Shown here in pieces: positions 20,880 to 57,374 of a DNA stretch of 64,000 bases. Numbering within the stretch: position 1 is the first letter of the stretch; every line of letters begins with the position of its first letter. The translations under genes and the position numbers were made by a program. The notes under the pieces were generated by a model that saw only the letters and a list, made by a program, of their open reading frames with translations, had not been told where the DNA came from and ran no database searches. Source of the DNA: Podarcis erhardii (Eukaryota); assembly GCA_964252035.1 (NCBI GenBank), contig OZ176200.1; one strand, 5' to 3'.

Positions 20880-21720
20880 TGCCGGGGCTGAGCCTTGGCC
20901 CCTGTGATGGAAGGGTGCCATTGCGGCTTGGGGAAGCGAGCCCTGAGCAGCCCGACGCTCCTCCCACCTCCGCTCCCGGCTGGGGAAAACCCTCCCGCGT
21001 CTTGGGGCTGGTTCCTTTAAGAGCCTCCCGCCAAGGACGTGCGCGATTCCGCCGCGCAGCATCCTTGAGCTTCCTGGTTAAGGCGGCCGGGTGCAGGAGA
21101 AGAAAGTTTACGGCCGGCAGGTCCCACCCTGGCGTGACCCAGGGAGTGCGCGGAAGGCTGGGCACGCCCGCCCCCTGGAGGCTGTCTGCAGCGGCGGCGG
21201 CAGCGGCGCCGAGTGGCACGATCTTTCCCCGTCGGCTCCCCGCGCGCTGCGAGCGGAGGAAGGGCGCAGCAAGCCGCGCATGGCGCTGGTGACCGTCTGT
21301 CGCTCCCCGTCGGGGAGCGGCCACTCGACACCCACCGGCAGCAAGGTGAGCTCGCACGCCGCTTCTAGCCCAGCCTCAAGCCGCCCCAAGAGAACCCCAC
21401 CCTGATCCCCCGACGGGACCCACACAGCAGCGGCTCTTCTTTCAGGCACGGCTGCGATCCATCATCCCCTTTCTGGGGCTGGCGGGGGGTGCTGTTTCGA
21501 CGGCTGCGCCATCGTGTGCCCCGTTCTCGCCACCTCTCTCTCCCATTGCAAGCCGTATGCTGAGCTGTGCAAGCGACTGCACCTTGCACCATTTTGGCCC
21601 CGAAGGATCTGGCCGTTTGTTCTCGCACCTCCCTGCAGGGGCGCTGTCGGAAGGAGGACTGGCTTGCGCGGGGTGGGGGGGCGGTATTGCGCAGAGAAGG
21701 GGGCCCAAGCGCCAAAGATC
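20880..21720. promoter_or_regulatory. CpG island and promoter of SSH3
   Basis: GC- and CpG-dense block around the first coding exon (ATG at 21280), with a GC-box-like CGCCCGCCCC near 21165-21175. Confidence 0.8.
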
Positions 21721-38962: not shown

Positions 38963-39011
<49 letters not shown>

Positions 39012-41419
39012 CCCATCAGACTGGGTTGCCCCAATACACCCCCTACTTCATTAAGAAGTACGATGCCATCAGTTCCTAGCTTTTGATCTCTGTCAGATTT
39101 GACACACCCAGTTACTCGTTTGGAAGAGCAAGCAGCTGAATTCATCCATCTCCTCCCAGCACTCTAACCACTACACCACACTGGCTGTTGAACAACCATA
39201 ATGTTTTCCAAGCAGCAATGATAGTCACTCACTTGGATTCATCATGATCACAGCAGAGTGGCCTCAGCATAATATAGCTAATCTGTGCCTTGGCAAGTGT
39301 TGAGTTAGGCCAGGAAGCTGGGGTATCCTACTCTTGGGTGAGGGTACAGCAACTGGATGCTGAATTTCATGACTGTCCTGTGTGATGCTGTAGCCCTGCT
39401 TATAGCAAATATTCATTCCCCACAGGGCACAAGGCTCTCGGGTGTTGGTGCACTGCAAGATGGGCGTGAGCCGCTCTGGCTCCACAGTGATTGCATATGC
39501 CATGAAGGAGTACGGGTGGTCACTTGAGCAGGCCCTTTCCCATGTACGGGAACGACGCCCAATTGTCCACCCCAATCCAGGATTCATGAGACAGCTGGAG
39601 CTTTACCAGGGCATTCTGGACGCAAGGTAAATCCAAGGGGAGGGAGAGCAGGTCTGATCACTGTGTATGTATGTGGGGAGGGCAAGGGAGACTGATGGGA
39701 GCTGCAGCTGACCAGCCTGATCAGACCACAGCAGAAGACTTTGTTGTTATTGTCCAAGGGCCAAACTGCATGTTACATGCAACAGCATGATGATCCTCTT
39801 AGACTGGAAAATCTACTTTCAGTGGGGCTATTGGGATCAGAGAAGATCTCCCCTTCCTGGGATTCTAAGCACCTGTGTGAAAAGGCAAACAGGAAAGATT
39901 CTGTGTGGAAAAAAATGATGGGGGTGCCAAAGAGTGGCAAGGAAAAGATCCGGCATCCATGCAAACTGCTCCATTTCCAACTTCCACTCCAAAGCACTTC
40001 TTCCAGTTAAAAAGGGCTGTTTCGTATTGTTAGGCACACAATATTTAATCTTAAACAGGGAGACACTGATAGCAAAATTGTCCCACACTAACAGTGCAGC
40101 AAAAATTAAATAGACATTGTGATTATCTTTAATATGTGTAATTAATGCTTCTCACTGTAACTTACTGGATTCAAAGTCCATTCTTTATTTGGCTCTTTAT
40201 TTAGCATTCCTTGCTGAATAATCTCTTACATTGTTCACCTCATGTTACTACGCAGCCGACACAGCAGCCTATGGGAACAAAAGGCAGGAGATGCCCACTC
40301 AGAAGATTCTCCAGATATAAGTGATGCCAGCAGTGATCCTTCAGGAAGCCCATACTACGAGACTTTAAGCTCAGAAGAAGAACCAGAGGAGCCAGTGACA
40401 ACCCCCCAGTATTGCTTTCGTCCTTTGCGGGAACCTCCTGAAGAACCTCACCATCCTGTGGACCCTCCTGATAGTCCCAGGCTCAGTCTTCAGGCCACAG
40501 AAGAACCTGGGGCATCGGATGACTCAGGAGCTGAGGAAGTGCGAAGACACCTGGCTACAATGAGAGTGCCAGAGAAGCCAGCCACGCTCAGACGGGAACG
40601 CATCAATCTCTATGCTGTCATGCGCAGCATCAGTGAAATGGACAGCCCAGAACGCCACATCTCTGTACCAGAGTGCGCTGCTGAGGAAGAGGTAAGAGGG
40701 TCATGTAAGGGCATGCTTCCAGAGAGAGGCAAGTGGAAAGAGTAAGGGAACTTATAATGGAGCCTCAAGGCATACAAGGGAAACAAAAATGGCAATGCAT
40801 AAATCAGTGGATCTGAAACCTCAGCTAATGCGAAGATGAATGGTAGAGGCAGGATGAAGAAAAATCCTTTGTAATTGCTGGCCCTCATTCAATCTACCTC
40901 TTCTTCCTCCAACAGGTATTTCTTCATGATGAAAAGAAGAAGACTGTGACCTTTGAGCCATTTCCCCAAAATGAAGAGAATTCTGTGTCAGGAACAGACT
41001 CTACAGCAAAGGTGCCACTGCCAGAGGAAGAGGAGGCTCAGGGTCGCAGGGCCAGGCGACGCGGGCGGAGGGCTCACCGGGGACGTCGCCATGTCTGCAA
41101 GCAGCTTTCGTACTACCCAGCACCAGGCAGGGTGCGCAAAGTTGTCCAGCGCATGGAGGGCCCTGTCCCATTTGGCCGCAGGCCCGCCTTACAACACCGG
41201 CTCTCTGTGGCTCAGCTGGCTGATGCTGCCCTGGTGGTGAGCCGGGCCAAGGAGTTTGAGGGACACACAGATCCCGAAGGACCAGACAAGCTCCGGTCCC
41301 CTTCTCCTCAGGAATCCAAACCTGAGGAAAGCACTGCCCTCTGTTCTTCCTTGCCCTGCTCCCGGTCCCGGCGGATGGTTCGCCAGGCCAGCGTAGACAT
41401 GGACCCCAACTCAGGGTGA
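21280..41419 (+). CDS. SSH3: Protein phosphatase Slingshot homolog 3 (dual-specificity phosphatase), 14 exons, 767 aa
   Basis: join(21280..21345,26477..26514,28828..29017,31524..31642,32840..32911,35738..35803,36028..36222,36908..37001,37275..37403,38177..38223,38516..38662,39426..39626,40256..40691,40916..41419) = 2304 nt, open frame. N-terminus is [18 protein letters not shown], the catalytic loop is [10 protein letters not shown], and the C-terminal RQASVD matches human SSH3 RQASVH. It lies between ANKRD13D and POLD4. Confidence 0.96.
22125..22214 (+). mobile_element. 3' tail of a squamate SINE/LINE
   Basis: GGCCACTGAGAACAGGATGCTGGATTAAATGGGCCTTGGACCTGATCCAGCAGGCTCTTCTTATGTTCT, a common squamate retroposon tail ending in ATGTTCT. 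Confidence 0.55.
22237..22378 (+). mobile_element. 5'-truncated Squam3-like SINE
   Basis: B box GGTTCGATTCCC, body, and tail AAGGCAGCTTCCTATGTT. Confidence 0.7.
22456..22573. mobile_element. MITE with 14-bp TIRs
   Basis: TAAGGTTACCAGAT ... ATCTGGTAACCTTA form a perfect inverted pair; no clear TSD. Confidence 0.6.
23850..23990 (+). mobile_element. MIR/CORE-SINE-like remnant
   Basis: tRNA-like head remnant, then GGAGAAGCCACTCTCT and CTACAGTGCAGGGATAATAATA, resembling the CORE region. Confidence 0.4.
24320..24586. mobile_element. hAT-type non-autonomous DNA transposon (MITE)
   Basis: TIRs CAGTGGCGTAGCGTGGG / CCCACGCTACGCCGCTG, with a perfect 8-bp TSD CTTGTAGG at 24312-24319 and 24587-24594. 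Confidence 0.85.
27290..27510 (-). mobile_element. Decayed L2 LINE ORF2 fragment
   Basis: The minus strand reads [25 protein letters not shown], matching the L2 RT motif (AL(V/I)TSRLDYCNxLxxGLP). Confidence 0.7.
28546..28735 (+). mobile_element. tRNA-derived SINE (Squam3-like)
   Basis: A box TAATTCAGTGGTAGAGC, B box GGTTCAGTCCC, body CTGAAACTCTAGAGAGCTGCTG and tail TAAGGCAGCTTCTTACATT. Confidence 0.8.
32553..32785. mobile_element. hAT-type MITE
   Basis: Ends CAGCGGTCAGCAAAC / GTTTGCCTACCCATG, with an 8-bp TSD GACTATAA / GACTATAG (7 of 8 match). Confidence 0.75.
33640..33770 (+). mobile_element. Retroelement 3' tail (L2-like stem-loop plus simple-repeat tail)
   Basis: GAGCCGCCCAG...GGCTGGGGAAACGCAGCC...TGGGCGGGGTATAAATAAA followed by (ATG)n-like repeats. 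Confidence 0.6.
34589..34724. mobile_element. hAT-type MITE
   Basis: TIRs (T/C)AGTGTTTCCCAAA(C/T)TTGGG at both ends, an internal inverted ACTACA.TTCCCATC / GATGGGAGTTGTAGT pair, and a degenerate 8-bp TSD CTTTAGCT / CTGTAGAT. Confidence 0.75.
34800..34915. mobile_element. Short MITE
   Basis: Imperfect TIRs CATGGGTGTAGCCAGG / CTTGGCTATGCCCATG. Confidence 0.55.
36527..36670 (+). mobile_element. MIR/CORE-SINE-like remnant
   Basis: tRNA-like head GTGGAGTGGTTTGG...CCCAGGTTAACATTCTCAC, then CCTACCTCACAG...TTGTGAGGATAAAAT. Confidence 0.45.
38966..39011. repeat. (TAA)15 microsatellite
   Basis: Perfect trinucleotide run in SSH3 intron 11. Confidence 0.95.
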
Positions 41420-43379: not shown

Positions 43380-44150
43380 ACCGTGACCATCATGCCCTGC
43401 GGCCACGGCAAAGGGGCGGGGACTAGGACACATGCGCAGAACGCTCTTTCCTTGTTGCTATGGGAGCCTACGGCAGGGCAGCTGCTGGGAAGAGGTAGAA
43501 TCCGCGTTCTCTTTTGTTCCTCCGCTGCGACGGGGGCATTTTGGCACCTGTCGCGACTCTTTCCCGGCTGGAGTTTGCGCCGGCGGCGGCCCCTCGTTGC
43601 CATGGCGGCGGCGTTGCCTCTCGCGTGCTAAAGATGCCCCGGGAGACGGCGAGGGAGGCAGCGAGGCCTCCGCCCGGGAGGATGTCGCGTCCGCAGATCA
43701 TCCACAGCGGCCACTTCATGGTGTCGGAGCCCCACGCCGACCCGGAGCCGGACCCCGAGGCGGCCCTGAGCCAGCCAGGCCGAGGCGCCCCGCCGAGCGC
43801 GGCCGAGCGAGCCAGAAGGGCCGGCTCCGCGCGGAAGACCGCGGCCGGGAAGGCCGGTGACGGGGCCCAGCTGACCGCCGCCGCCGCCGCCGCTTACGAC
43901 TTCGACACGGTGGACGAGGCCGCGTGCCTGTGCTACCGCTACGGGCCTCGAAGCAGCGGAGCCCTCAGCATCGACCCTTCGCTCACGAAGCTCTTTGAAT
44001 GCATGACGCTCGCCTACAGGTAAGGGCGGGGCGGGCGGGGCACAGCGGACCGTGTGTGTCTGGGGGGAAATGTGGAGAGACACAGCAGGAAGGGCTAGAG
44101 AAGGGCCCGCCCGGTGGCTTCCTTTCTCTCTTCCGGCCCTTGCCTCTCGG
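43380..44150. promoter_or_regulatory. CpG island and promoter of the Mondo-family gene
   Basis: CpG-dense block over exon 1, with a GC box GGGGCGGGG at 43413-43421 and an NRF1-like CATGCGCA at 43431-43438. Confidence 0.8.
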
Positions 44151-47100
44151 GATGCATGCAGGGAACCAGACTATGCCTTGGGGTTACAGAGTGCCTGCTG
44201 TGGGAACTGCAGCACGACCAATTAGCCTGCCATTCATACGCAAGATATACTAGTATGCATGCAGATAAACGATACTCATAAGAGAATCCATCTGCAGGTA
44301 ACTTGGCATCGTTAAGTAAAAGCCTCGGATTCCTTGTAACTACAGACATAAAGGGCATTTTCACAGCTTGCCTTTGTCGCGTCTGCCAGGCCAAGTTAAA
44401 ATCTAAATGAGTGTATAAATCTAGATTTGTAGCTGCCAGTTAAGAAGTGCTTCCCTACAACCTTTCCTTCCACTTTAAGAACTTTCACTTATGGGAGGCA
44501 GGTGTGAGAACAGAGTAGTCAAGGAAGGAAACTGACATTTTAGAGTCAGAAACGCATACATCTGTTGAAACCAACAAATCCAGTTTTGTAGTTAAAAAAA
44601 AAAAAAGCAGGGGACCTAGATATGACATAGAGTTGTGCCTGGTTCTCCAGCATTCTACTACCACTTGCTTTCTGGCATAGTATTCTTTATTTATTTATTT
44701 ATTTATTTACTCACTCACTCTGGTTGCAGTTCTACACACAAGGGATTAGAATCAATGAATAAGTCTCATTGAACTCCATAGGAGTTACTTCTGAGATAAG
44801 GTGCAGAGGATTGCACTGCTGCTTATTTTACTGTATTTGCAAGGTACCCAATAGCGTCTCTAGTGGCATATGGGAATATGTTCATATAAGCACAGCATAG
44901 TAAGGTAAAGGTAAAGGTACCCCTGCCCGTATGGGCCAGTCGTGTCCAACTCTAGGGTTGCGTGCTCATCTCGCTCTAGAGGCCGTGAGCCGGCGCTGTC
45001 CGAAGACACTTCCAGGTCACGTGGCCAGCGTGACAAAGCTGCAGCTGGTGAGCCAGCACCAGCGCAGCACACGGAAACGCCGTTTACCTTCCCGCTATAA
45101 AGCGGTCCCTATTTATCTACTTGCACTTAAGAGTGCTTTCGAACTGCTAGGTGGGCAGGAACTGGGACCGAACGACGGGAGCTCACCCCGCCACGGGGAT
45201 TCGAACCGCCGACCATGCAATCGGCAAGTCCTAGGCGCTGAGGTTTTACCCGCAGTGCCACCCGCGCAGCACAGCATAGAGGAGGGGAAGTCACACTTAA
45301 CTTTAGTCTTCCCAGAAAATCATATCAGAAAAGCACATCTTGCTGCTTAGACAGTGCTTCTGACCCATACATATTACTTTGGTTTTTATCTACCCCATTT
45401 TCAGTGTATCTCATACCCCAGTTGACTTATTCAGCAGTCAAGTCCTTTAATCTTTAATCAGCTCTCAGGTCAGACTCCTTTAATGTGTGGAAGGGAGAGA
45501 CAGTCTTAAATAATAGAAATTTCTATTTGACAGAGTGTAGTGGATAGATAGTTATCATGAGTATTAAAGTGAGAAATGGACCATGACCCAAGTTGTCCCT
45601 ACCAGATGCTAGAGACATAATATCAAAAAGCTGTATGGGTTATGTGGGATTAAATATCAGAAAGTATATCTGCTTTGGTAAAGGTCTGTTTTGTCCCCTT
45701 TCTGATAGTAGTGTTGCTAAAGCATAAAAACTTGGCAAATTATATAAACAGGAAGTTTTCACAGGACAAGTATTTCTTCCTGTGCTCCCTTTAGCTTCCT
45801 AATAGAATTTTAATGTGAACTCTTGTGTACAATTTTAATGATTTATGTTAAGGAACTAATTGGCTCGTTTTGCACAGTCTAGTTTTAATTATTGTTACCT
45901 GTGCTGTACTATGTTGAAAATTAATACACGCCCTGAATTTTCTGAATTGGCTGTCCCCCTCCCCACAACATTTCTGAGAAGTAGGAGAGAAACTTGAGCA
46001 ATGAAACAAGCTGCTTAGAGAGGTAATGAAATTTGCTTCCTTGGAAACTTTCAAAGAAAGGCTGGGTGGGCAACTCTCTGGAATGTTTTACATTACTGTG
46101 CTTCAGGGCATAACTTGGACTAGATTAGGGATCAAAAACTTTCAGTCTGCTCGCTGCATATGGCACCCAGAACACTTGATTGCTGGCTGTGTGCCTCTTA
46201 AAAGTTTAGAAATTCTAGTGTTTCTTTTTTAAAGTAACATTTGACATGATTGCATAGACCATTTTGGATATGTGATGGTAAAACAACGACTCTCTTTTCT
46301 GGTTCTTGATGCCAAACAGCCTATCCTGCACTGATCTTGACCTTTGGGATTTCTCCTAGTTCTAAAAATAATTAAAATAAAAAGTACCACACTGGAACAG
46401 ACAGCATTTGTTTTAACCAGTATCCTGTTCCCAGGAATGTCTGGCCTTGATGTTAGCATATAGAGTTTTGAATTAAATAGCTGTAGTCCTTTCATATAAA
46501 AGTTGTATTCTTACCTGAGTTGCACATTCAGCGGATGCTACAGCAGTATGTTGCAGACTAGCTTCCCAATCAATATACTTGCTGCAAAATTACTGCTTCT
46601 GCCATTTTTTATGTAACTGCATGCATTTTTCCTACATTGAGATCATCTCCTTGTAAATATATATCTATGAAGCAGCTTTAAATCAAGAAAAAAAGTGTTC
46701 CGGCATTTTCAGCAACCTAGTGAACTGGAATAGATCCTCAGAACTGGGATTTTTGGGTCTGTTCTTTGAATTCCAGCATTACGACATTTCAAACATTGAC
46801 TCCTTTAGGTATTTTCTAGTTAATCTCCCACAACATTATGAGATGTCATCTTGGACTAAGCAAAAGGACAAAGGTAGTATGAGGAGTTTGAATGCCTGAA
46901 GAAATCCCCTCAACAGAGTCCTTTTTGACATTAACTTTGTCAAAAGCTCAATTTACCATATACCTGAGCCCACTGGTTTCAGTGGCAGTGCAAGCCTCTG
47001 CCCCCAGCCAGTGAAATAGACATTATATTTTGCTCAATAGTAACATAGAATCATATATTGAATCTTTGCACAGCTATGCATTAGAACTGTGACTGATCTA

Positions 47101-50100
47101 TCTGCCTGGGATTATTCTTATTCATTCTGTCTCAAGCAGGTGCAGTTTTGAATAAGAAGCTGTTGTGGCAGAACAGCAAAGGGGCATGGGTTCTGAACAG
47201 TATCTTGTTTGTTCTTTTACACAACTGTTCAGTGAAACAGCTGCCAGGTTTGAAATGTAATGGGGCAGAGTGCAATAGGGTGGCCTGAGAATGTGGTCCA
47301 ATACACTTAGTGTGAGGATTTTCATGTGGGATGTTTGTGCACCTTCACGTGAACTTCTGAAGGGCAAAATATAAGTGTGTGTTGCTACTGATTAAAAAGG
47401 GTGCTTGAGTGGAATGCAAGCTGCCAGTATCTGTCTGTATTCCTAAGGAGATGCTGGCTCATTATAATTTCTTCTCCTTCGTAAGAACATACAGATGAGG
47501 CACAGTTTTATTTTAACAGTGGAAGAAATAAACCACTGAATTAACCTTCCAAGATGTTTTTAATCATTTGGATTACTCAAGTCAATACTGTATTTTTCTG
47601 TTGTAGACAGATACACGCACTAACAAATTGGTTATTAACAGCAAAACACAAATCATTTAACTGGATGTGTTTTAAATTATGCTGCAGTTCTTCAGAATAA
47701 TTGAATTACCATAGGTTCTGTCCAGGAAATAGTTGTCCAGCACTCACTGACTCTTCGTAGATGGAGTTCTGCAACAATAATGAATGGGGAAGACCCCTTA
47801 TAGTAAGGCTGGGAGTGGGGGGTATTTCCGGATCTGCCACCTAAAGCCAGGGCTATTTTTTCTTATGTCATAATTGCCACATGGAATTCCACCCCAAGGC
47901 TGGTATCTACAGCATACTTTTTAAAAGCAAGATTTTGTCCTTTGTTGAGGAGCTTCATCAGAAAAGCAGGAAGGCAAGTATACATAGAGAGCCATGTAGT
48001 TCTGTGGGCAGAGCTTCTGTAATCAACACAGCTTCTTATCCCTATATATGGTCTATAATTATGTTCTACACTTATCAGCATATGCTACTTCTAACCTGTT
48101 CATTTTTCTCCTTCTCCCACAGTTTGCTCTAAAAAGTTGAGGAGGAATCAACATCCAGTGAGAGGTTTAGAATAAAGCAGGCATATTGGGTCAATCTGTG
48201 CAAAAGGTGAACATTTGTAGACATCTGAGTAGTTTACAGTTTATAGTTTTGAGTGCAGAATTTAGTTTTTTTGGCACAGATTAGTAATAAAGTGTGGCTA
48301 TAGAATAATCAAGCTTATTAAAGAGATGTTCCTGTTCAGTGTGTTCTTCTTCTTCGGGTTGTTGTCTGGCCCTGTTTCCCCTTGAAAGCCAGATATACTT
48401 GGTATTACAAGAGGTGGTTTTTTTTGGCTTTGTAGTGAGAAACTTGTCTCTCCCAAATGGAAAACCTTCAAAGGGCTGAAACTGCTACAGCGTGACAAGA
48501 TTCGACTCAATAATGCCATCTGGAGGGCCTGGTATCTGCAGTGTAAGTAGCCTGGAAGAAGGTATTTAAAAACAACAACAACAAAAAAAAAAACCAACCA
48601 ACCATATAAAAGGTCATCCAATATGGGCAGATTAGGTGGGAACCACCAAATTCTGTGTATAAATCCACAAAAAAATGGGTTCTTCCTCCATCCCTACACG
48701 TGTTTTCCATGACTTCCTCAACCAAGGAGACTGTTTTACACAGAATTATGTATTGCAAGTTTGCAAAGCTTTATGCTAGCAAAAGTCACATATTAATTGC
48801 TTATGGATTTAAAGCTCTTCAGCTCTACTGCCCTATTTAGTGGATGCTGAAATGGGAACGACTGCCAGCCAGCCAGCATTTTCTCTGTTTGGTCCTGCTT
48901 GAAGCTGTACTGCGGATTACAGCCCCTTTTCTTTTATTTCATTCTGGATGCAGATGTGGAGAAGCGGCAGAACCCAGTGTGCAGTTTTGTGACCCCACTA
49001 GAGTGCAGTGATGTAGATGTGCACCGCAAGCCTGAGGTGAGCAAAGGTTACTTGGGCCTTTCTTACTTAAGAACATACAAAGAAGACAGATTATGCATTT
49101 CTGTAAGTGACCCCTGGCTGCACCTTTATTTGGCAGGCTGTCATCATGGAAGGAAAGTACTGGAAACGTCAAATTGGGGTTGTCATCAGGGAATATCACA
49201 AATGGAGGTTGTTTTCCTATACCCAGGTAAGTGTCTTCTCCAGCAAGATGTGTTGTACTTCATATAGCTCCCCTTCATCCCTAGATGACATGTTCCACCC
49301 AAGCTCATACGGTCCTTTTTAGTGTCAACCAAGGAAATCAGGTAGCTCCATCCAGAAGCACCTTGGAACTCCATTGTAAGAAGGTGGATTTTCTAGATGC
49401 TTCTTGCCAGGCTATCATAGTCTGGATCTGGTGGTTATGAGGTGATCTGGAACTAGACTGGCGAGGCTACATTTCTGTCTTACTCTGATGGGTGCCTTAG
49501 CCTATAGACTCCTTTCCACAGCTGCCAAAGGCTCTCATTCTCTTGCCCTCTCTCTTACTTCCACAAAGACGCACACTGGTCACCCAGCTATCCCTGTGTG
49601 ATTATTGTGGTCTGCAATGGCTTGCTGAGGCCTCAGGTGTTCATTGTTGTTGTAGCAGTAGTAGTAATAATAATAATAATAGTACATTATACCTAGCCCT
49701 TCCTCCCAAATGTGTCCAGGGCAGCAATAAGCCAGATAGGATTTTATTTAGCTACCTATGGTTTTCCTCTAGCTAAGTATTGTAATTGTAGTACTTTCAG
49801 TGGCCTAATCCTAAACATTCTGTGCATTTTGTTATAGGCTTCAAAGAAGATGGATAAACCCGTCTATGGTTCTTCTCAGGTGCTATTTTAATGCCTTGTT
49901 CCTATACTGCACCCTCCAGATTCCCCTTTCCCCATGGCAGAGGGTGGAATTAAAAAAGCTTGGGGGTTCTCTGCAGCCATTCAGTATTCCAGCCCCTCAT
50001 TTGAGTTTGCCTAAAGTTGGAGTTCACAGCTCTTTCTCTCCCATTCTGGACAGGAAGTAGCTGATGATGTTCCAAGGGCAGAGCTGAAAACGGATGGAAC

Positions 50101-53100
50101 AGATGCAAGCCCCATGGACCTTGACCCCTTGCATGACCTGGATGCACTTCTGGACACCTTCATTTCTAGCCGCAACCCTTATGGTGGCCCCAACCTCCGT
50201 GGCCTTGGTGAGAGGCCTTGCTTTGTGCTCATTCCATCTATCCCTGGATCTGTCCCTTTCTACCAAGAAACCCTTTAAGTTTTCTCCACTGTCCCCAGAG
50301 GCTAGTACAGATGCCTCTAGAGGGTGGAGAGAGCTTTTGAAGTATCTCCATGTGAGAGCCAGTCCCTTGCTTGTGCACCAGAGAACAGTTCTTTGCTATG
50401 GAACAAAGTAGTGAGCGAGTGATATTATTTCTCATTTTGTGTCTTCAGCTCACCAGGGAAATGCAGATATGATCCAGCCCACCCTGACCCAACTGCACCC
50501 CATCTTTGGGGAGGAGTTTATGGACTTGGACCCCATTCAAGGTAACAGCAGAGGTTTATATGCCTGTACTTAGTGGTAAGGTGGCGCATCTCAAAGCTGA
50601 AAGACATCCTCTGAAGCACTTTGTATGGCTTCTTAAGACCACTTCAGACTGTGTTTAAATTATGTATCCATACTGTACACACTTAAAAGAATTCCGTTTG
50701 TTTATAAATGCTACTGGGTACATGCTGCTAGGATCTCCTGATCAGCTGCAATTCTCTGCAGTGCTTATCTGTAAAAGAGCCCTTGGATTCCTCAGAATTG
50801 CAGCTTGCATATTTACTAAACTCACTGTTAGGGAAAAAACTGAACAAAATATGAAAAGTGTGTCATTAAAGCCCAAAAATCAAATAGAAACATGTATTAT
50901 TATTATTATTTTAAGCCCACAAGTTAATCACCAGTTTTGAAATATTAACTTGTGACCTCAAGAGTAAATAACATCTGAGTCTGGGTCACCATAGTGGGCT
51001 GAAAGCTATCACTGGTGAGAGGAGACTATTTCCAACCAGGCATTGATGAAATTCTAGTTCACCCAAGGCCAGAGCAGAATGCTGCTGAGCAAACATGATA
51101 CGTCCTGGTAAGGCTAGACATTATTTAAATCAGTCAGCATGCACATAAAAATCCTCTTTTGGGCGTCCAATGCTCTAATAGACGACTCATTCTCCATATA
51201 ATCACATGCATACTGTACTTTATATATTGTTTGTCCCCTATCCCATTTTCTGAATCAGCCAGGACAAATTCTTCAGGGCCACTGTATATCCCCTTTTCAC
51301 AGGAAGAAAAAAGTAGGCAAATTAATCTTGTATGAATTCTTAATTTGAAAATCTTAAAACTTACGCATTTGTCATCTCAAAGTTTCTACTTGCAAGTATA
51401 GCATCTACATATTGAGCCTATTTCAGTCTCATTCCTGCCACTCTGTCACATAACTCTGAAATTAGCAGTCCCCACCTGCATATTGCTCGAGTTCTTGACT
51501 TGAGTTTCTCTACCAACTGGTTCAGTTGACATATCCTGGATTTTAGGTCTCATTGTTCTTCGAAACCACCAATTGATGTCTTCTTGTATGGTGGATGTGA
51601 ATGAATGAATGTTTATTATTAAGGCCAAACAGCCAGCATACTACCTGTGTGGTGAAATCCTGATGATTCTTTGCTTAATTGATTCAGACACACAAGCCAT
51701 TTATCTTCTACCAGTTGCTCTTCATCTCCTCCCAGCCATGTACCTTTTAAATCTTTGCTTTCTTTTCACAGAATTCATCACTTCCTGTCGTTCTCAGCCC
51801 ATGAGCCAGGTAAGGAGAATAATTTTATCTGATAGCTTACAAACTCCTTGGGCTTCTGCAGCCCCTGATGCTTACTGCAGATACTGGTCTGTGCTTGATT
51901 TTGATTTTGGAAAGGCAATAGCCTTTTTCAGCATTGCAAAAAAACAACAACTGAGCAGTGGGAGTTCCCCACTTGTATGATTTTCAGTGCAGCCATCTCC
52001 AGCCTGGACTCAGGAGTTGTGTTTGATTTGCACTCTCTTCTCCCCCCTCTTAGGCTCCTGCAGTAACGGATGCTAGTGCTTTGAACCAGTGCAACTCAGA
52101 TACACCTCTCATTGCCCCTGGGACCAAGGATCTCCCACCGCCTGGAGACTCTCTCAACCCCATTCCCATCTCACTGGATGTGGAGCCGCCTGTACCTTTG
52201 AATGGACAGCAGACCTTCCTGCCATTCTTCCCCACCTCCCCACTGAGGATCAGCCCGCCGCCTGTCTCTCCCATCTTGCGCATGCAGCCTCAAACCACTT
52301 TGGTCTTCTCTGTCATCACGCACACAGGATCAGAAACAAATTCTCCGTCTGTATTTCGGGACACTTTTGCTGTGCCAGTCTCTGCTCCTCCACCCAAGGA
52401 TGGGAAATGCAGACACCTGCAACGGATTGCTCCAGCACCCTCCTCTAGCCAGCAGCCAGCCCTTCCCGGTGCTCCGCTCCCCTGCCTGCTTGCAACTGGT
52501 ATGTCCCTGCAAGGACAGGCTCTCCGTAGGGGAAATTGAGGTATTGCTGACCTAGACTACAATGCTTCTCTAGGTCCATTTGGAGTTTTAAGTCATACTG
52601 CAGAATTCTCCTTTCTTTTTGGTTGTTGTTTTCTGAAGCAAATCTCACCAGGATCAACTTTTGGAATCCCTAATTTAAACAACTGCATGCATTATTAGTG
52701 TTTATTTTGATATAATTATCTGAAGCTGGAGTTTAGCTTCATACTTGGGAATCACTGGAAGCAAAAGCATTTTTCTGTACTGGAAAAATAAAATATGTGG
52801 TCCAGGGAGATAGTTTTTTGTGTTACTGCAGAATTTTAAAATTATATACAGCGGTACCTCGATTTTCGAATGTAATCTGTTCCAGAAGACCATTCGAGTT
52901 CTGAAACATTCGAAAACCGAAAACTCAGTATAGAATTTTTTTGATGTGGTTTATTTATTGTTTATGACTTTTGTAATTACCGTATTTTTCGCCCTATAGG
53001 ACACAATTTTCCCCTTCCAAAAATGAAGGGGAAATGCGTGTGCGTCCTATGGGGCGAATGCAGGCTTTCGCTGAAGCCTGGAGAGCGAGAGGGGTCGGTG

Positions 53101-56100
53101 CGCACCGACCCCTCTCGCTCTCCAGGCTTCAAGAGAGCCGCAGCGCCAGTCCCACAAGGTCAGGGGACAGCGGGGAGGCAGAACGCCGCCATCCTGCTGT
53201 CTCCCGATGTGGTTTGGAGGCTGACGGCGGGGAGATGCGTGCTTCTCCCGGCCGCCAGCCCCGCAAGCTCCGGGGACAGCGGGGAGGCGCAGCGCGTCCT
53301 CCCGCTGTCCCCGGACCTGATCTGCAGGCGGGCGGCGGGGAGAAGAGCGCTTCTCCCCGCTGCCGGCCCCACAAGCGCCTGGGGGGGAAATAATTTTTTT
53401 TTCTTTATTTCCCCCCCAAAAAACTTGGCGCGTCCTATGGGCCGGTGCGTCCTATGGGGCGAAAAATACGGTATGTAAATCTTGTTATGCTGTAAGCCGC
53501 CTTGAGCATTGTTTTTTTAACTGTGGAAAGGCGGCATACAAATAAAAAAAAATGATGATGAAGAACTGAGTATGGAAAACTCAATACGGAAGCCGTGTGG
53601 CATGTTCGACTTCTGAGGCATATTTGAAAACCGAAGCATTTATTTTTGGGTTTCTGGCATTCAAAAACTGAAATGTCTGTCAATGGAGATGTTCAAAAAC
53701 CAAGGTACCACTGTATCTGACTTGAGCTGATAGGCATTACGTAACAGTGCCTGTATCTCCTTCAGTGGATTTAGGGTTTAGCCTTGCAGAAATTGTGTGT
53801 CAAAACTATGTACTGACTAGTCTGTAGAATAGTAAAATGGTTAGTCCACAGGTATTGGAGACGGATTTAAGGTGGCAATCTTACTTGCAACTATACATAT
53901 GTGTAAAGATGTCTGGGAGCTGCTGTTTGGAAAGGGAAAGAAAAAGTCCTCTATGCCCAGATTCCTGCTTTGATCCCCTTCTTGCTTCTCTGGAGTGTAG
54001 TTAAGCTTTTCGTTTCGATGCAGCCAGCAGTTTGAGCCAGGTAAATCAAGCAGAACTACAAATGTCAACATTCGTCCAAATGCTTCATAGTTAAACAGAA
54101 AACCTTCAACTCATTAGTAGAAGTGAAATGACAGCTCATTAATATAACTATGCATATTTACTAGCTTTTTAAAGTTATATTTTAATTTTTCTTAGATCTA
54201 CAAGTGAGCACAGATTTTCTTGACCCATTTCAGAACAAGGCTCTTGTGCCTTGTAGCTTTTTTGAATGGGGAAATTTGTCAAGAGCTGTAGAGTCTTCTA
54301 ATGTGCAAGCATTATGAAGAGAGAATCTGTAACTATGAAACTTTCCTCTCTACTCCATTTAAAACTCACACATAAAGGTCCAGAATTCCTATGTGTGTCT
54401 GATGGCAAAGTGGGTACCAAACAGTTGGTGTCAGATTGGCTGGTACATGCAGGAATTTTATGACACTAATGGTTATGGGGAAACCAGGCCTAGGTATGTT
54501 TTGGAAGGGATCCCTGAGGCAAGGATGCTCATTGGCCTCTCTGTTGGGTAGGGTGCCATGCATTTAAGTAGAGATTATTGGCCTGAATTGTATTTTCAGT
54601 TGTGGTGGGTGGGATTTCATAAAGCAGCAGACTCCTTTTTGTGGGAAAATGATTGCTTGTACATGAGAGCATGAGCAAAGTTCTTATTGTTACAGGGTGA
54701 TTTCATAGCTAGAAGCATCCTTGGAGCATGAACAGCGCGTGAACAGCTCGTGCTGTCCTATATGATTGGCTAACGTGGCATGGCCTGATGCTCGCATGGT
54801 CTAGTGCGAAGGTCCTTATCTGCTTGCTAGAACAAATTGCTTGGCTTGTACTTTGTATCTTTCTGATTTCACACAATAAAAGCTGTGCTGCATGAGCCCT
54901 AGAGGCAGCTATATTTCGGAACCTATTATGGTGTGAGACTGATTTTTCCTTGGATGCCGAGCTGCAACTCGACACCTTTTCATTAAATAAATTCTGCCAC
55001 ATTCAAAAACTTGGTCTACTGGTGAGCAGCTAAACTGAAGCTGTGTAGTTACAGGGAGTGAGTGATGCTGCTTCAGCCAGCCAAGTTTTGTACATGCATT
55101 GGGGGTTAATACATAGAGGCTGGGAAAATAAGAACATCTCTTTCATCTCTAGGTCCTGCCCCACTGCCCCTCACTCCAGTCATGAACTCTGTGCAGGTAA
55201 GGATGCTCTCCTCTGCCACCTTCCTTCTGCGAGGCCTTCTATCTCTGTTCTGCTTTTTGCCTCCTTGGAGTTGACAGGCAGCGTATTTTTCTATCTTTCT
55301 TTTTAGCTGCTCTTTCTTTCTCTCAACCCTGCTTTTCCTCTCCCACAGGTGTGTGGGGTCCCAAAGCCCCCTGTGAATATGCTGAACTCATTCTCGGCAA
55401 CGGTGAAGTCTCCTCCACTTGCCTCTGCTGCTGCTTCCCCTGACACTGGTAAGCTGGCTCAGGAGGGTGCAAAGTCACTCGGCCTCTCTTCTTAGCAATA
55501 TCTCATCCGCTTTCACTGGATTGGTCTATATGCCGTGCCAAAGTAGAAATTGAATACACACCTTAAGAGGAACTCACCTACCCCAGTATTTTTTGGATTA
55601 TTTCAGGTGCCAAAACCAAGGAGAGAGCTGAGGACAACGCTCTCTGCAAACCCCAGGAAGTGGACAAATGCTGTACTGCCAAGGTAATAAGAATACCCAC
55701 ACCACTGTACCCCATCTTGTTGGCTTGAGCGTTGTGGGAGAAGACATCTTTTCTCAAAGATGATAGCCAAAGGGGTAGTTGCCTGGCAGTGTCTCAAATC
55801 ATGGCTTGATTGGCTCTTGCAGGGAAGTCGCAGATCAACACTTACCTCGGCTGACTATGCCCGCCGTAGGGTCATCAGCTCCGGCTTCAATACCCTTGCC
55901 ACTCTGGTGTTGACAGGACCTGATCAAAGCAGCACTAAGGTACGCATCCCCCACTGTACCAGAGGATGGAAGGGCACATATTCTTTGCTGTTTGTCCAGT
56001 CCTCCCAATTTGCTTTGTGTACCTGCTGGAGCCATTCTTGTGGTCTTTGCCCTCCCAATCCATTTTACACCTTTACTCCACCCCCTCACCTCCCCAGTTC

Positions 56101-57374
56101 AGCAAAGCAATGCTCCTGCAGAAAAGTGCGGCACATGTGGAAAGACTGCAGCAAGAGCGCCGACAAGCTCAGGAGACAGTTGAAAGACTACGTGGGGAAA
56201 TCAAAGAGCTGAGCACTGCCATTGAGTGAGTTGCGGGGCTGGCTTAAGGGGTTTTCATTGGATCAGGGATACAAGTTAAAAGGTGAGAGGGGAACTCTGT
56301 CAACAAGTTGTGGCTTTTCTCTTCCCTCCAGTGACTTTCAGCGCCAGCTTCCACCTACGGGAGCTCCTGTGCTGCCACCACAGTCAGGTCAGGCTTCTCA
56401 ACTCTATGAAGAGTATGTCCGCAAGCGCACCCTGCAGGACTGGCGCTTCTGGCTTGTATCCACCACTGAGCATGTGGGGTGGGGTGGGATGGGACAGGTT
56501 AGGGTGCAAGAAAGCAGCAAGGGGAGGTATTTGGCATGGCATCAGTGGCTTGCTGGGTGCTTAAGGGGAGCAGGGAGACTTGGCTGCATAGGCTCCTTAA
56601 CCTCTTCCAACCTGCAGTTCAGCATGGTGATTAAACCACTCTTTGAGAGCTACACCAGGACAGTGAGCACAGGCAATGTCAAGGAATTCTGCGACTCAGT
56701 GTTGAGCTGGTTGGAGCAGCACTGCACCCTGCCCATCTTGCGCCCTGGTATGGATCAACAAGGAAATCTAGAAATGTCTTTCCCTTCACTGACCCATCTC
56801 TTTCCCCCCCTATGGCTTTCAATGATCCTTGCCTACCTTCTAGTACGTGCTTGTGTATCATTCACCTATCTTACTCCTGCTTGAAGTACTCTTACGTTCA
56901 CACATAACTAAGAGAGTGGAGCAGAACCATGGCTTACCAATTATACTCCACATTCCCGATTCCCTTTTCATGCCTTGCTAAGTTACTAGACACAATTGCC
57001 CATCACTATGATCCTTTCCTTGCCCTGAAGCAAGATTATTGGACAGTGCCTTAAAGCAAGGCCCAGATGTGACCTTAGGAGTTACCTGGCTTTGTGGTGT
57101 TTAGGAAAAAATCTAGCTGGAGATGCCAGCTGTTCTCACAAGTCTTCTATTCCTGATACTTCCAGAAGACTTGAAAGGATTCTCTTTCTAGGAATTAGGA
57201 GAAAGTGTCTGCATTGAGTTCACTGTTACTGTTTTGGTTTTTTGTCCCACAGCTATCTCTGGCTCCCTCCTGCAGCTAAGCAAGATCACATCCATACTGA
57301 CTCGGCCAACCCAGTTGCGTGAACAAGCCCTGCAAGCAGTAGCTGGCCCTCCACACTACAAGAGCAACAGCTAG
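43634..57374 (+). CDS. Mondo-family bHLH-ZIP protein (MLX-interacting protein / ChREBP-like); probable third paralogue distinct from MLXIP and MLXIPL; 17 exons, 743 aa from ATG 43682 or 759 aa from ATG 43634
   Basis: join(43634 or 43682..44019,48436..48542,48954..49036,49137..49226,49838..49879,50054..50207,50449..50541,51772..51809,52054..52498,55153..55196,55349..55448,55607..55683,55823..55939,56098..56225,56332..56455,56618..56747,57253..57374), open frame to TAG. Motifs: MCR I QIIHSGHFMVS, MCR II SIDPSLTKLFECMTLAYS, MCR III RDKIRLNNAIWRAWYLQY, MCR IV EGKYWKRQIGVVIREYHKWR, MCR V GNADMIQP, HLH-ZIP SKAMLLQKSAAHVERLQQER, DCD RTLQDWRFWLFSMVIKPLFESY...WLEQHCTLPILRP. Exons 8-12 (low-conservation Pro-rich region) were inferred mainly from splice sites and phase, so they are less certain. 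Confidence 0.93.
44901..45267 (-). mobile_element. Full-length Sauria SINE
   Basis: The minus strand has a tRNA-derived head GCGCGGGTGGCACTGCGGGTAAAACC...GGTTCGAATCCCC and an (ACCTTT)n 3' tail. A perfect 12-bp TSD AGCACAGCATAG lies at 44889-44900 and 45268-45279. Confidence 0.92.
46003..46140 (+). mobile_element. CR1 LINE 3' fragment, diverged
   Basis: GAGAGGTAATG...CCTTGGAAACTTTCAAAGAAAGGCTGG...CTCTGGAATG...TTGGACTAGAT, matching the CR1 ORF2 end and 3'UTR pattern. Confidence 0.6.
52849..53713. mobile_element. Tc1/mariner (Tigger/pogo-like) MITE carrying two nested insertions
   Basis: TIRs CAGCGGTACCTCGATTTTCGAA / TTCAAAAACCAAGGTACCACTG, flanked by TA at 52847-52848 and 53714-53715. Confidence 0.8.
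52980..53471. mobile_element. Young Tc1/mariner (pogo/Tigger-like) MITE, innermost of the nested set
   Basis: 23-bp TIRs CCGTATTTTTCGCCC(T/C)ATAGGAC with 1 mismatch, a TA TSD at 52978-52979 and 53472-53473, and a GC-rich interior with palindromes. Confidence 0.88.
56456..56617 (+). other. U12-type (minor spliceosome) intron in the Mondo-family gene
   Basis: 5' splice site GTATCCAC, and a perfect U12 branch site TCCTTAAC at 56594-56601, 16 nt before the end of the CAG acceptor. Confidence 0.8.

What the first reader, a model, noticed from the sequence alone, without database searches (positions are those of the whole stretch)
43634..57374. Intact third Mondo paralogue between SSH3 and POLD4, apparently lost in mammals
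Seen in sequence: a complete 17-exon Mondo gene whose conserved exon sizes (107, 83, 90, 42 nt near the N-terminus; 130 nt in the DCD) fit the MLXIP/MLXIPL pattern, placed in the order ANKRD13D-SSH3-[gene]-POLD4. Established (from memory): human has only MLXIP (12q24.31) and MLXIPL (7q11.23); ANKRD13D-SSH3-POLD4 lie at 11q13.2 with no coding Mondo gene; and the paralogues ANKRD13A and SSH1 share 12q24 with MLXIP. Inference: this is a whole-genome-duplication ohnologue. It is MondoA-like in places (YDFDTV, ECMTLAYS) but much more divergent. Automated pipelines may already label it 'ChREBP-like LOC', so the novelty is likely functional and evolutionary rather than its mere existence.
Basis: partly seen in the sequence, partly recalled or inferred. 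Interest (0 to 1): 0.82.

Follow-up and report, generated by a model that had tools for sequence, protein, structure and literature searches.

The report
Third Mondo paralogue beside SSH3
This lizard window holds an intact, spliced and selectively constrained third relative of the sugar-sensing transcription factors MondoA and ChREBP; the literature I could search counts only two, mammals appear to have lost this one, and land vertebrates have rewritten the residues that normally read the DNA target.

Summary
Window 43634-57374 (+) holds a 17-exon, all GT-AG gene with a 2280-nt reading frame (759 aa). It is 97% identical to a Podarcis raffonei protein that NCBI names 'MLX-interacting protein-like'. 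RNA contigs from related lizards show nine of the sixteen splice joints exactly. dN/dS against Podarcis is 0.20.

Orthologues form one fully supported clade ('M3'): lungfish, caecilians, salamanders, turtles, crocodile, ostrich/emu, tuatara and squamates. This clade lies outside both MLXIP and MLXIPL, each of which includes sharks. AU tests reject nesting M3 inside bony-vertebrate MLXIP (p = 2.5e-5). The order ANKRD13 - slingshot - M3 - POLD4 recurs in Podarcis, and in emu with a CLCF1-like gene. No mammal, neognath bird, frog, ray-finned or cartilaginous fish member appeared in the searches. The two papers read that count Mondo paralogues (a third speaks only of mammals) give two.

M3 keeps MCR I-V, the 14-3-3 helix, HLH-zipper and DCD. 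Tetrapod M3 has replaced five otherwise invariant basic-region residues (His lost, Glu to Asp, two Lys and Asn gone). Sauropsids have also eroded MCR6.

Most likely it is a glucose-gated MLX partner that cannot read a canonical E-box, acting as an attenuator or an altered-specificity factor. That mechanism is inferred, not shown. The scan had already noted the basic-region change on this same window (s1-220618).

The parts
43634..44019 (+). Exon 1: start codon (a second, more widely conserved Met lies at 43682, 'MSRPQIIH'), MCR I (QIIHSGHFMVSEPHADP), an M3-specific low-complexity insert, and MCR II (YDFDTV ... LTKLFECMTLAY)
48436..48542 (+). Exon 2 (107 nt): MCR III with the 14-3-3-binding helix RDKIRLNNAIWRAWYLQ
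   Evidence: matches ChREBP chains 5F74/4GNT/9GCP
48954..49036 (+). Exon 3 (83 nt): first half of MCR IV (VEKRQNPVCSFVTPLE)
49137..49226 (+). Exon 4 (90 nt): second half of MCR IV (EGKYWKRQIGVVIREYHKWR)
49838..49879 (+). Exon 5 (42 nt): linker
50054..50207 (+). Exon 6: eroded MCR6 (LLDTFISS in place of [ST]DTLF[ST], with the squamate 4-aa deletion)
   Evidence: motif definition from PMC3323566
50449..50541 (+). Exon 7: MCR V (GNADMIQPTLTQLHP..FMD)
   Evidence: the RNA loose end at 51770 carries the end of exon 7
51772..51809 (+). Exon 8 (38 nt)
   Evidence: joint 51809/52054 in 3 RNA runs
52054..52498 (+). Exon 9 (445 nt): proline-rich central region, with VITHTGSE and LQRIAPAP motifs shared with MLXIP
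   Evidence: joints on both sides
55153..55196 (+). Exon 10
55349..55448 (+). Exon 11
55607..55683 (+). Exon 12
55823..55939 (+). Exon 13: remodelled basic region (SRRSTLTSADYARRRVIS), helix 1 and loop
56098..56225 (+). Exon 14: helix 2 and leucine zipper
56332..56455 (+). Exon 15: start of the DCD (QLPPTGAP ... RTLQDWRFWL)
56618..56747 (+). Exon 16 (130 nt): DCD core (FSMVIKPLFESY ... WLEQHCTLPILRP)
57253..57374 (+). Exon 17: DCD tail and stop codon. RNA contigs continue more than 1.3 kb beyond 57400 (3' UTR)
4654..16673 (+). Context: ANKRD13-family gene (ankyrin, ANKRD13_C and UIM exons)
21290..41416 (+). Context: slingshot-family phosphatase gene (MALVT... start, DEK_C exon, long terminal exon)
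   Evidence: Podarcis and emu annotations
61265..61573 (-). Context: POLD4 exon (DNA_pol_delta_4, 48.3 bits)

Best explanation
This is the lacertid orthologue of an unrecognised third vertebrate Mondo gene ('M3'), a sister lineage of MLXIP and MLXIPL that split from them before cartilaginous and bony vertebrates diverged. The most economical origin is the early vertebrate genome duplications. I found M3 only in lungfish, caecilians, salamanders and non-avian reptiles, plus ostrich and emu. It has apparently been lost elsewhere, mammals included. The gene is functional: open frame, spliced RNA, purifying selection.

Inferred mechanism. The protein keeps the N-terminal nutrient-sensing and shuttling module (MCR I-V and the 14-3-3 helix) and the HLH-zipper-DCD dimerisation module. 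It should therefore pair with MLX and be gated like MondoA and ChREBP. In tetrapods the basic region has lost the His, Glu, Lys, Asn and Lys that are invariant in all other Mondo proteins sampled. An M3:MLX dimer should therefore not read a canonical CACGTG half-site. In sauropsids the MCR6 motif, proposed as the activation and G6P element, is also eroded.

My reading is a glucose-regulated attenuator or competitor in the MLX network. My probabilities: third ancient paralogue, about 0.9. Origin before the gnathostome radiation, about 0.75. Non-canonical DNA reading, about 0.7. Within that, net attenuator about 0.45 and altered-specificity binder about 0.3.
For: Gene model: 17 GT-AG exons and an open 759-aa frame. 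Nine splice joints appear in RNA contigs of 4 runs. dN/dS is 0.20, with 31 synonymous and 20 non-synonymous codon differences (binomial p = 6.7e-8); the bHLHZ-DCD part is 0.12.

Phylogeny: the M3 clade is 100/100, its internal order follows the species tree, and it is separate from MLXIP and MLXIPL. AU tests reject nesting inside MLXIP, and lungfish M3 alone still sits outside crown MLXIP. M3 keeps the ancestral loop ending 'K-xSKA', as in ChREBP, lamprey and invertebrates, whereas all gnathostome MLXIP have 'ISNA/ISHA'. Synteny with SSH and POLD4 is conserved in lizards and emu; turtle shows the POLD4 side only.

Functional modules: the N-terminus matches the ChREBP fragment crystallised with 14-3-3 (5F74) at E = 7e-60. 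MCR I-V are conserved. The AlphaFold model shows a basic/helix 1 - loop - helix 2/zipper - helical DCD layout, and its best PDB matches are Mad-Max, USF2, Myc-Max and MITF.

Basic region: 13 of 13 other Mondo proteins have H, E, K, R, R, N and K at the key positions. In 16 of 16 tetrapod M3 these read variable, D, A/T/V, R, R, variable and S. Pfam HLH matches only profile positions 12-53 at 23.0 bits, against 39.5-45.8 bits over positions 1-53 for lungfish M3, MLXIP and ChREBP. In MAX the homologous His28 and Glu32 make the base contacts (PMC5389568). Glu-13 is treated as essential for E-box recognition in bHLH classification (PMC4312455). MCR6 erosion is shown.
Against: No binding, dimerisation or reporter data exist; the whole mechanism is inferred from sequence. 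Glu to Asp is chemically conservative. The second Arg (the Arg36 equivalent) is kept. The new motif S-[AS]-D-x-[ATV]-R-R-M-x-I-S has been conserved from caecilians to lizards, which argues that the region still does something and is not free to drift, as it would be in a pure Id-like decoy. Amphibian M3 keeps a canonical MCR6, so loss of activation, if real, is not a feature of the whole clade.

An origin before gnathostomes needs independent losses in cartilaginous fishes, ray-finned fishes, probably coelacanth, frogs, mammals and most birds. AU tests share the model's sensitivity to long branches, and M3 evolves about twice as fast as MLXIP. Separate MLXIP and MLXIPL genes were shown in other squamates and in turtles, not in the window's own genome. 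Tissue and condition of expression are unknown.
Confidence: 0.7

Rival explanations
1. M3 is a later duplicate of MLXIP, specific to lobe-finned vertebrates, that landed next to SSH3 and then evolved fast. It is not a product of the early vertebrate genome duplications.
For: All members found are from lungfish and tetrapods. None appeared from sharks, ray-finned fishes or coelacanth, so this origin needs far fewer losses. The free tree puts M3 weakly next to MLXIP (67/17; SH-aLRT 81). M3 evolves about twice as fast as MLXIP, so long-branch repulsion from crown MLXIP is conceivable.
Against: AU tests reject M3 grouped with sarcopterygian MLXIP (delta lnL 88.6, p = 2.8e-6) and with bony-vertebrate MLXIP (delta lnL 57.2, p = 2.5e-5). 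The shorter-branched lungfish sequence alone still falls outside crown MLXIP, which has SH-aLRT 99. M3 lacks the loop changes shared by all gnathostome MLXIP, sharks included, and keeps the ancestral 'SKA' loop. Its neighbours are ANKRD13 and slingshot family members, whose paralogues lie with MLXIP on human 12q24 (from memory).
Confidence: 0.15
2. M3 is a pure Id-like decoy: it binds MLX, the dimer does not touch DNA at all, and its only role is to titrate MLX away from MondoA and ChREBP.
For: Five of seven invariant basic-region residues are replaced, including both Lys. Most tetrapod M3 keep only 4-5 basic residues there, below the six or more used to call a bHLH DNA-binding (PMC4312455). 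Pfam HLH no longer matches the basic part. MCR6 is eroded in sauropsids.
Against: The replaced region is not drifting. Asp (16/16), Arg-Arg (16/16), Met (14/16), Ile (16/16) and Ser (15/16) have been fixed across roughly 350 million years of tetrapod evolution (that age is my estimate), unlike the missing or free basic regions of Id-type proteins. The Arg36 equivalent is kept. AlphaFold models a continuous helix through the region.
Confidence: 0.25
3. M3 is an ordinary ChoRE-binding activator, functionally redundant with MondoA. The basic-region changes are tolerated.
For: Glu to Asp is conservative and Arg-Arg is retained. All dimerisation and sensing modules are intact. Lungfish M3 still has the canonical His..Glu..Arg.
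Against: His, Glu, Lys, Asn and Lys are invariant from molluscs to humans in every other Mondo protein sampled. The homologous His and Glu are the base-reading residues in MAX. The HLH profile score is halved.
Confidence: 0.1
4. The locus is a decaying or non-functional copy (unitary pseudogene in the making, or annotation artefact).
For: The rate is faster than MLXIP. Ratite copies carry substitutions at otherwise invariant MCR positions. One RNA contig retains intron 15.
Against: Frames are open in more than 20 species spanning lungfish to lizards. dN/dS is 0.20. Spliced RNA is seen in four runs. Exon 2 is identical in protein between the window and Podarcis, and differs at two conservative positions from the agamid.
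Confidence: 0.02

Closest known systems
MondoA (MLXIP)
   Same: Both have 17 coding exons, MCR I-V, the 14-3-3 helix, bHLH-zipper and DCD. The central motifs VITHT.S and [LV]QRIAPA are shared. MLXIP is the weakly favoured sister group. Global identity is about 47-49%.
   Different: M3 is a separate clade that excludes shark-to-human MLXIP. It has a 40-70 residue insert between MCR I and II, an ancestral long loop instead of the MLXIP 'ISNA/ISHA' loop, a remodelled basic region, an eroded MCR6 in sauropsids, twice the evolutionary rate, and a different chromosomal neighbourhood (SSH/POLD4).
ChREBP (MLXIPL)
   Same: Same domain plan. The N-terminus aligns to the crystallised ChREBP fragment 5F74 at E = 7e-60. 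The loop type ('xK-xSKA') and the evolutionary rate (1.21 against 1.12) are similar. A sister relationship is not rejected (p = 0.34).
   Different: About 43% identity. It is a separate clade, and turtles carry both genes. The basic region is non-canonical. I did not look for a beta-isoform exon.
Id / Emc-type HLH proteins and engineered dominant-negative MLX
   Same: An HLH dimerisation partner whose DNA-reading residues are missing could lower the activity of the network by sequestering the shared partner. This is an analogy of mechanism only.
   Different: There is no family relationship. M3 keeps a conserved, partly basic segment, a zipper, a DCD and a large regulatory N-terminus, so any inhibition would be nutrient-gated and need not be complete.

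Membership tests
Mondo family (MLXIP/MLXIPL/invertebrate Mondo) | Mondo conserved regions MCR I-V in the N-terminus | tested here: met
   All five align with near identity to MLXIP, MLXIPL, lamprey and invertebrate Mondo. PDB ChREBP fragment 5F74 matches at E = 7e-60.
Mondo family (MLXIP/MLXIPL/invertebrate Mondo) | MCR6 motif [ST]DTLF[ST] (PMC3323566) | tested here: not met
   The window has LLDTFISS after a 4-aa deletion shared by squamates. Turtles, crocodile, ratites and tuatara have ADTIF[YS][ST]. Lungfish and amphibian M3 keep the canonical motif.
Mondo family (MLXIP/MLXIPL/invertebrate Mondo) | bHLH-leucine zipper fold | tested here: met
   Pfam HLH scores 23.0 bits (cut-off 20.7) over profile positions 12-53. 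The AlphaFold model has helices 14-38 and 51-95, and its best PDB matches are Mad-Max, USF2, Myc-Max and MITF.
Mondo family (MLXIP/MLXIPL/invertebrate Mondo) | Canonical basic region H-x-x-A-E-Q-K-R-R-x-N-I-K | tested here: not met
   The window has L-T-S-A-D-Y-A-R-R-R-V-I-S. Five invariant residues are replaced in all 16 tetrapod M3 sampled, while lungfish M3 keeps H, E, R, R and N.
Mondo family (MLXIP/MLXIPL/invertebrate Mondo) | C-terminal dimerisation and cytoplasmic localisation domain (DCD) | tested here: met
   An HMMER search with the two DCD exons finds 363 Mondo-family proteins. Invariant columns W128, F130, W131, F133, W163, C168 and R174 are shared with all Mondo proteins sampled.
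Mondo family (MLXIP/MLXIPL/invertebrate Mondo) | Heterodimerises with MLX | not testable with these tools
   Inferred only from the conserved HLH, zipper and DCD.
Mondo family (MLXIP/MLXIPL/invertebrate Mondo) | 17 coding exons, as in the MLXIP/MLXIPL ancestor | tested here: met
   17 GT-AG exons; ancestral structure per PMC4766361. Intron phases were not compared one by one.
MLXIP orthologue (MondoA proper) | Nests inside the gnathostome MLXIP clade | tested here: not met
   MLXIP is 100/100 without M3. Constrained trees are rejected at p = 2.8e-6 and p = 2.5e-5. Squamates with M3 also have true MLXIP.
MLXIPL orthologue (ChREBP proper) | Nests inside the gnathostome MLXIPL clade | tested here: not met
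   MLXIPL is 100/99 without M3. Turtles carry ChREBP as well as M3.
2R ohnologue of MLXIP/MLXIPL | Divergence older than the split of cartilaginous and bony vertebrates | tested here: met
   AU rejection of placements inside crown MLXIP, and the lungfish-only tree. The caveat is the long tetrapod stem branch.
2R ohnologue of MLXIP/MLXIPL | Lies in a chromosome block paralogous to those of MLXIP/MLXIPL | tested here: inconclusive
   Neighbours are ANKRD13- and slingshot-family genes plus POLD4. That these are ANKRD13D/SSH3, and that ANKRD13A/SSH1 share 12q24 with MLXIP, rests on memory. No macrosynteny tool was available.
2R ohnologue of MLXIP/MLXIPL | Members in lineages outside lobe-finned vertebrates | tested here: not met
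   None among the best hits of three searches. This is absence from protein databases, not from genomes.
Id-like non-DNA-binding HLH | No functional basic region | tested here: inconclusive
   The reading residues His and Glu and two Lys are lost, but a conserved D-x-A-R-R-M-x-I-S segment remains.

The most novel reading that the evidence does not exclude
Early jawed vertebrates had three Mondo sugar sensors. The third became, in land vertebrates, a nutrient-gated natural antagonist or re-targeter of MLX that no longer reads the carbohydrate response element. Mammals, frogs and most birds then lost this brake independently. The mammalian MondoA/ChREBP system, which underlies the current models of glucose-responsive transcription, would then be a reduced version of the ancestral circuit.
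Probability: 0.35. Interest if true: 0.82.

Novelty: new variant of a known kind. Interest (0 to 1): 0.68.

Why it matters
MondoA and ChREBP are the central glucose-responsive transcription factors of animals, and both are studied as targets in diabetes, fatty liver and cancer. The two evolutionary studies I read state that vertebrates have exactly two Mondo paralogues (PMC3177325, PMC4766361); a third paper says the same of mammals (PMC11900861). One of those studies sampled Anolis.

A third, ancient, constrained paralogue changes the family's history. It gives a clean case of differential ohnologue loss. It also offers a natural experiment: a Mondo protein with an intact sensing module but a rewritten DNA-reading surface.

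If it antagonises or redirects MLX, it would be an endogenous regulator of the pathway that model mammals lack. That would matter for how reptile and amphibian metabolism is interpreted. The lungfish, amphibian and reptile series also shows the order of the changes: the basic region first, MCR6 later. On the practical side, dozens of database entries named 'MLX-interacting protein' or 'MLX-interacting protein-like' are this gene, not MLXIP or MLXIPL, and could corrupt orthology sets.

Tried and rejected
- Genomic context for ostrich, leatherback turtle and Rhinatrema isoforms: not on record, because only the longest product of a gene is indexed.
- Protopterus and Microcaecilia loci: too long to be served, so synteny in lungfish and amphibians is unknown.
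- ESM Atlas search with the slingshot C-terminal exon, to tell SSH3 from SSH1/2: only chance-level hits.
- ChoRE consensus CAYGNGN5CNCRTG anywhere in the window, to test whether M3 might be a ChREBP/MondoA target: none found, 0.18 expected.
- Rfam on 42-64 kb: nothing.
- PDB: no solved Mondo or MLX bHLHZ/DCD structure to map contacts directly, so MAX was used as the reference.
- The ChREBP-MLX heterotetramer paper gave no residue-level contacts.
- Literature searches for a third Mondo, MondoC, mlxip2, mlxipl2 and similar names found no description.
- Pseudogene and retrocopy readings were rejected: introns, open frame, dN/dS and spliced RNA all argue against them.
- A lacertid MLXIP or MLXIPL protein did not appear among the 120 rows shown in any search, so presence of all three genes in the same genome is shown only for other squamates (two genes) and for turtles.

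Full report
**What is there.** The window is vertebrate DNA with no N runs. On the + strand between 43634 and 57374, open stretches carry every hallmark of a Mondo protein. These are QIIHSGHFMVS, YDFDTV...LTKLFECMTLAY, KLVSPKWKTFKGLKLLQRDKIRLNNAIWRAWYLQ, VEKRQNPVCSFVTPLE, EGKYWKRQIGVVIREYHKWR, GNADMIQP, an HLH, a zipper, and the two DCD blocks.

Using the closest database protein (P0162) as a guide, I refined every junction. The result is 17 exons, all GT..AG, with a 2280-nt frame and no internal stop (759 aa). The protein is 97.2% identical to Podarcis raffonei, 96.8% to Lacerta agilis and 96.3% to Zootoca, so the window comes from a lacertid lizard. Seventeen coding exons is the structure inferred for the MLXIP/MLXIPL ancestor (PMC4766361).

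**Is it used?** RNA-derived contigs from four public runs of close relatives (95-99% alike) were laid on 51700-57400. They show joints at 51809/52054, 52498/55153, 55196/55349, 55448/55607, 55683/55823, 55939/56098, 56225/56332, 56455/56618 and 56747/57253, all GT..AG. A loose end at 51770 carries the end of exon 7. Exons 1-7 rest on orthology only.

Against the Podarcis raffonei locus (L003), the coding sequences differ at 51 codons: 31 synonymous and 20 non-synonymous. dN/dS is 0.20 by NG86 and 0.12 in the bHLHZ-DCD part. A binomial test against neutrality gives p = 6.7e-8. The gene is transcribed, spliced and under purifying selection.

**Neighbours.** Pfam finds ANKRD13_C in exons at 6.1-9.9 kb (+), the DEK_C domain of a slingshot phosphatase at 37.1-37.6 kb (+), and DNA_pol_delta_4 at 61265-61573 (-).
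- The Podarcis annotation has SSH - gene - POLD4(-).
- Emu has ANKRD13 - SSH (734 aa) - gene - POLD4(-) - a GLYAT-like gene - a CNTF/CLCF1-like gene.
- Loggerhead turtle has gene - POLD4(-).

From memory, human 11q13.2 reads ANKRD13D-SSH3-POLD4-CLCF1, so the block is its orthologue. I did not test the paralogue identity of SSH or ANKRD13 by a tree.

**Relatives.** An exhaustive HMMER search with the in-frame stretch holding both DCD exons found 363 proteins. A word-indexed search with the agamid orthologue P0002 listed about 80 clusters scoring 566-1781 bits. They come from squamates, tuatara, turtles, Crocodylus, ostrich, emu, three caecilians and two salamanders. Nearly all are named 'MLX-interacting protein-like', 'MLX-interacting protein' or 'carbohydrate-responsive element-binding protein-like' by automatic pipelines. 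Below them come a lungfish transcript (P0224, 530 bits) and then true MLXIP (476 bits and less). P0224's nearest relative is a Protopterus annectens protein at 73% identity. No mammal, neognath bird, frog, ray-finned or cartilaginous fish sequence appeared in this group.

**Phylogeny.** I built a tree of 67 proteins and 700 columns under LG+C20+F+G4 with a careful search. It gives three gnathostome clades:
- MLXIP, 100/100, sharks to human.
- MLXIPL, 100/99, shark to birds.
- The new clade 'M3', 100/100, with the internal order lungfish, (amphibians, ((turtles, (crocodile, ratites)), (tuatara, squamates))).

That order follows the species tree, as expected of orthologues. M3 joins MLXIP only weakly (67/17), and M3+MLXIPL is not rejected (p-AU 0.34).

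Two hypotheses named before testing were rejected. M3 as a duplicate within sarcopterygian MLXIP gives delta lnL 88.6, p = 2.8e-6. M3 within bony-vertebrate MLXIP gives delta lnL 57.2, p = 2.5e-5. Because tetrapod M3 sits on a long stem, I repeated the tree with the lungfish sequence alone. It still falls outside crown MLXIP (SH-aLRT 99), as its sister (81) (quick tree, the careful run did not finish).

One character agrees independently. All gnathostome MLXIP share a changed loop end (ISNA/ISHA, shortened in tetrapods). M3 keeps the ancestral 'K-xSKA' found in ChREBP, lamprey and invertebrates.

The same species carry the other genes. Eublepharis and Sceloporus have true MLXIP on other contigs. 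Microcaecilia and ostrich have MLXIP. Turtles have ChREBP and MLXIP.

M3 is therefore a third gene that arose before cartilaginous and bony vertebrates split. The simplest origin is the early vertebrate genome duplications, followed by several losses. The main weakness is that no member was found outside lobe-finned vertebrates.

**What the protein keeps.**
- MCR I-V are almost unchanged.
- The segment 107-220 aligns to the ChREBP fragment crystallised with 14-3-3 (5F74) at E = 7e-60. The 14-3-3-binding helix differs by one residue.
- The HLH, zipper and DCD are conserved, with many columns invariant across all Mondo proteins sampled.
- An AlphaFold model of the C-terminal 215 residues (mean pLDDT 72.8) has helices 14-38 and 51-95 followed by a helical DCD. 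Its best PDB matches are Mad-Max, USF2, Myc-Max and MITF.

The evolutionary rate is twice that of MLXIP and equal to that of MLXIPL: path lengths are 1.21, 0.62 and 1.12.

**What it has changed.** Every other Mondo protein sampled, mollusc to human, has H-[IL]-x-A-E-Q-K-R-R-x-N-[IL]-K. In 16 of 16 tetrapod M3:
- His is replaced by variable F/L/P/S.
- Glu is Asp. In the wider set, emu has Asn.
- The first Lys is A/T/V.
- Asn is variable.
- The last Lys is Ser.
- Arg-Arg and Ile are kept, and Phe has become Met.

The window reads L-T-S-A-D-Y-A-R-R-R-V-I-S. Lungfish M3 still has H, E, R, R and N, so the remodelling happened on the tetrapod stem.

Pfam HLH matches the lizard protein only from profile position 12, at 23.0 bits. 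Lungfish M3, MLXIP and ChREBP match positions 1-53 at 40.1, 39.5 and 45.8 bits. In MAX the homologous His28 and Glu32 make the base contacts of the CAC half-site, and Arg36 reads the central CpG (PMC5389568). Glu-13 is the residue taken as essential for E-box recognition in bHLH classification (PMC4312455).

A second change is stepwise. The MCR6 motif [ST]DTLF[ST] has been proposed as an activation and G6P-binding element (PMC3323566). It is canonical in lungfish and amphibian M3. It is ADTIF[YS][ST] in turtles, crocodile, ratites and tuatara. In squamates it follows a 4-residue deletion; the lacertid form is DTFISS.

**How it most likely works (inference).** With its sensing and shuttling module and its dimerisation modules intact, M3 should be regulated like MondoA and ChREBP and should pair with MLX. 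With the reading residues and two lysines gone, the dimer should not recognise a canonical E-box half-site. In sauropsids a weakened MCR6 argues against strong activation. I therefore favour a nutrient-gated attenuator or competitor within the MLX network.

The new basic-region motif has itself been conserved for about 350 million years (my estimate of the caecilian-amniote split). That speaks against a completely inert segment and keeps an altered-specificity DNA binder as a serious alternative. None of this has been tested at the bench.

**Known or new.** The two evolutionary studies read (PMC3177325, which sampled Anolis; PMC4766361) say vertebrates have only two Mondo paralogues; PMC11900861 says the same of mammals only. 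Three full-text searches for names of a third found nothing. The library lacks most subscription journals, so an existing description cannot be excluded. Gene models exist in public databases but under names that hide their identity. I confirm the residue changes but find the 'dead decoy' reading only one of two live options.

Noticed in passing
window 52846-53609 and 54565-54755 (intron 9): RNA contigs pile up here at depths of 70-1100, against 5-75 on the exons. The area holds a 108-bp unit repeated 2.2 times (53144-53384). These are probably expressed interspersed repeats rather than part of the gene. Rfam finds nothing.
   Followed up: partly
window 56456-56617 (intron 15): This intron is 162 nt, in frame and free of stops. 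In the window it would add 54 residues inside the DCD if retained. One RNA contig (run X13) runs through it, though that contig differs there by small indels and so would not stay in frame itself, and a 191-aa database ORF (P0001) from a related lizard is the same unspliced read-through.
   Followed up: partly
P0208 (ostrich) and P0219 (emu); locus L004: Ratite M3 sits on a long branch (0.34) with skewed composition. It carries substitutions at positions invariant elsewhere (for example YNLSTV for YDFDTV, Asn for the basic-region Asp, KNWKR for KYWKR). This may be relaxed constraint on the way to the loss seen in other birds.
   Followed up: no
window 43432-43700: There are two candidate start codons, 43634 and 43682. 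The second ('MSRPQIIH') is the one shared with amphibian, turtle and lungfish proteins. The Zootoca isoform X2 model adds an upstream extension whose counterpart here (from 43432) is in another frame.
   Followed up: no
L004 21273-23194 (emu): A glycine-N-acyltransferase-like gene lies between POLD4 and the CLCF1-like gene in emu. I do not recall one at that place in human 11q13.2.
   Followed up: no
P0071 (Latimeria MLXIP, UniRef H3BFX7): Its bHLH segment reads as unrelated sequence (SSAPMKKRFQVRGRKFSIG) where all other MLXIP are invariant. This is probably a gene-model error in that entry.
   Followed up: no
Database names of M3 orthologues: The same gene is called 'MLX-interacting protein', 'MLX-interacting protein-like' or 'carbohydrate-responsive element-binding protein-like' in different species, and even in different isoforms of one species. 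That is a trap for automated orthology.
   Followed up: yes
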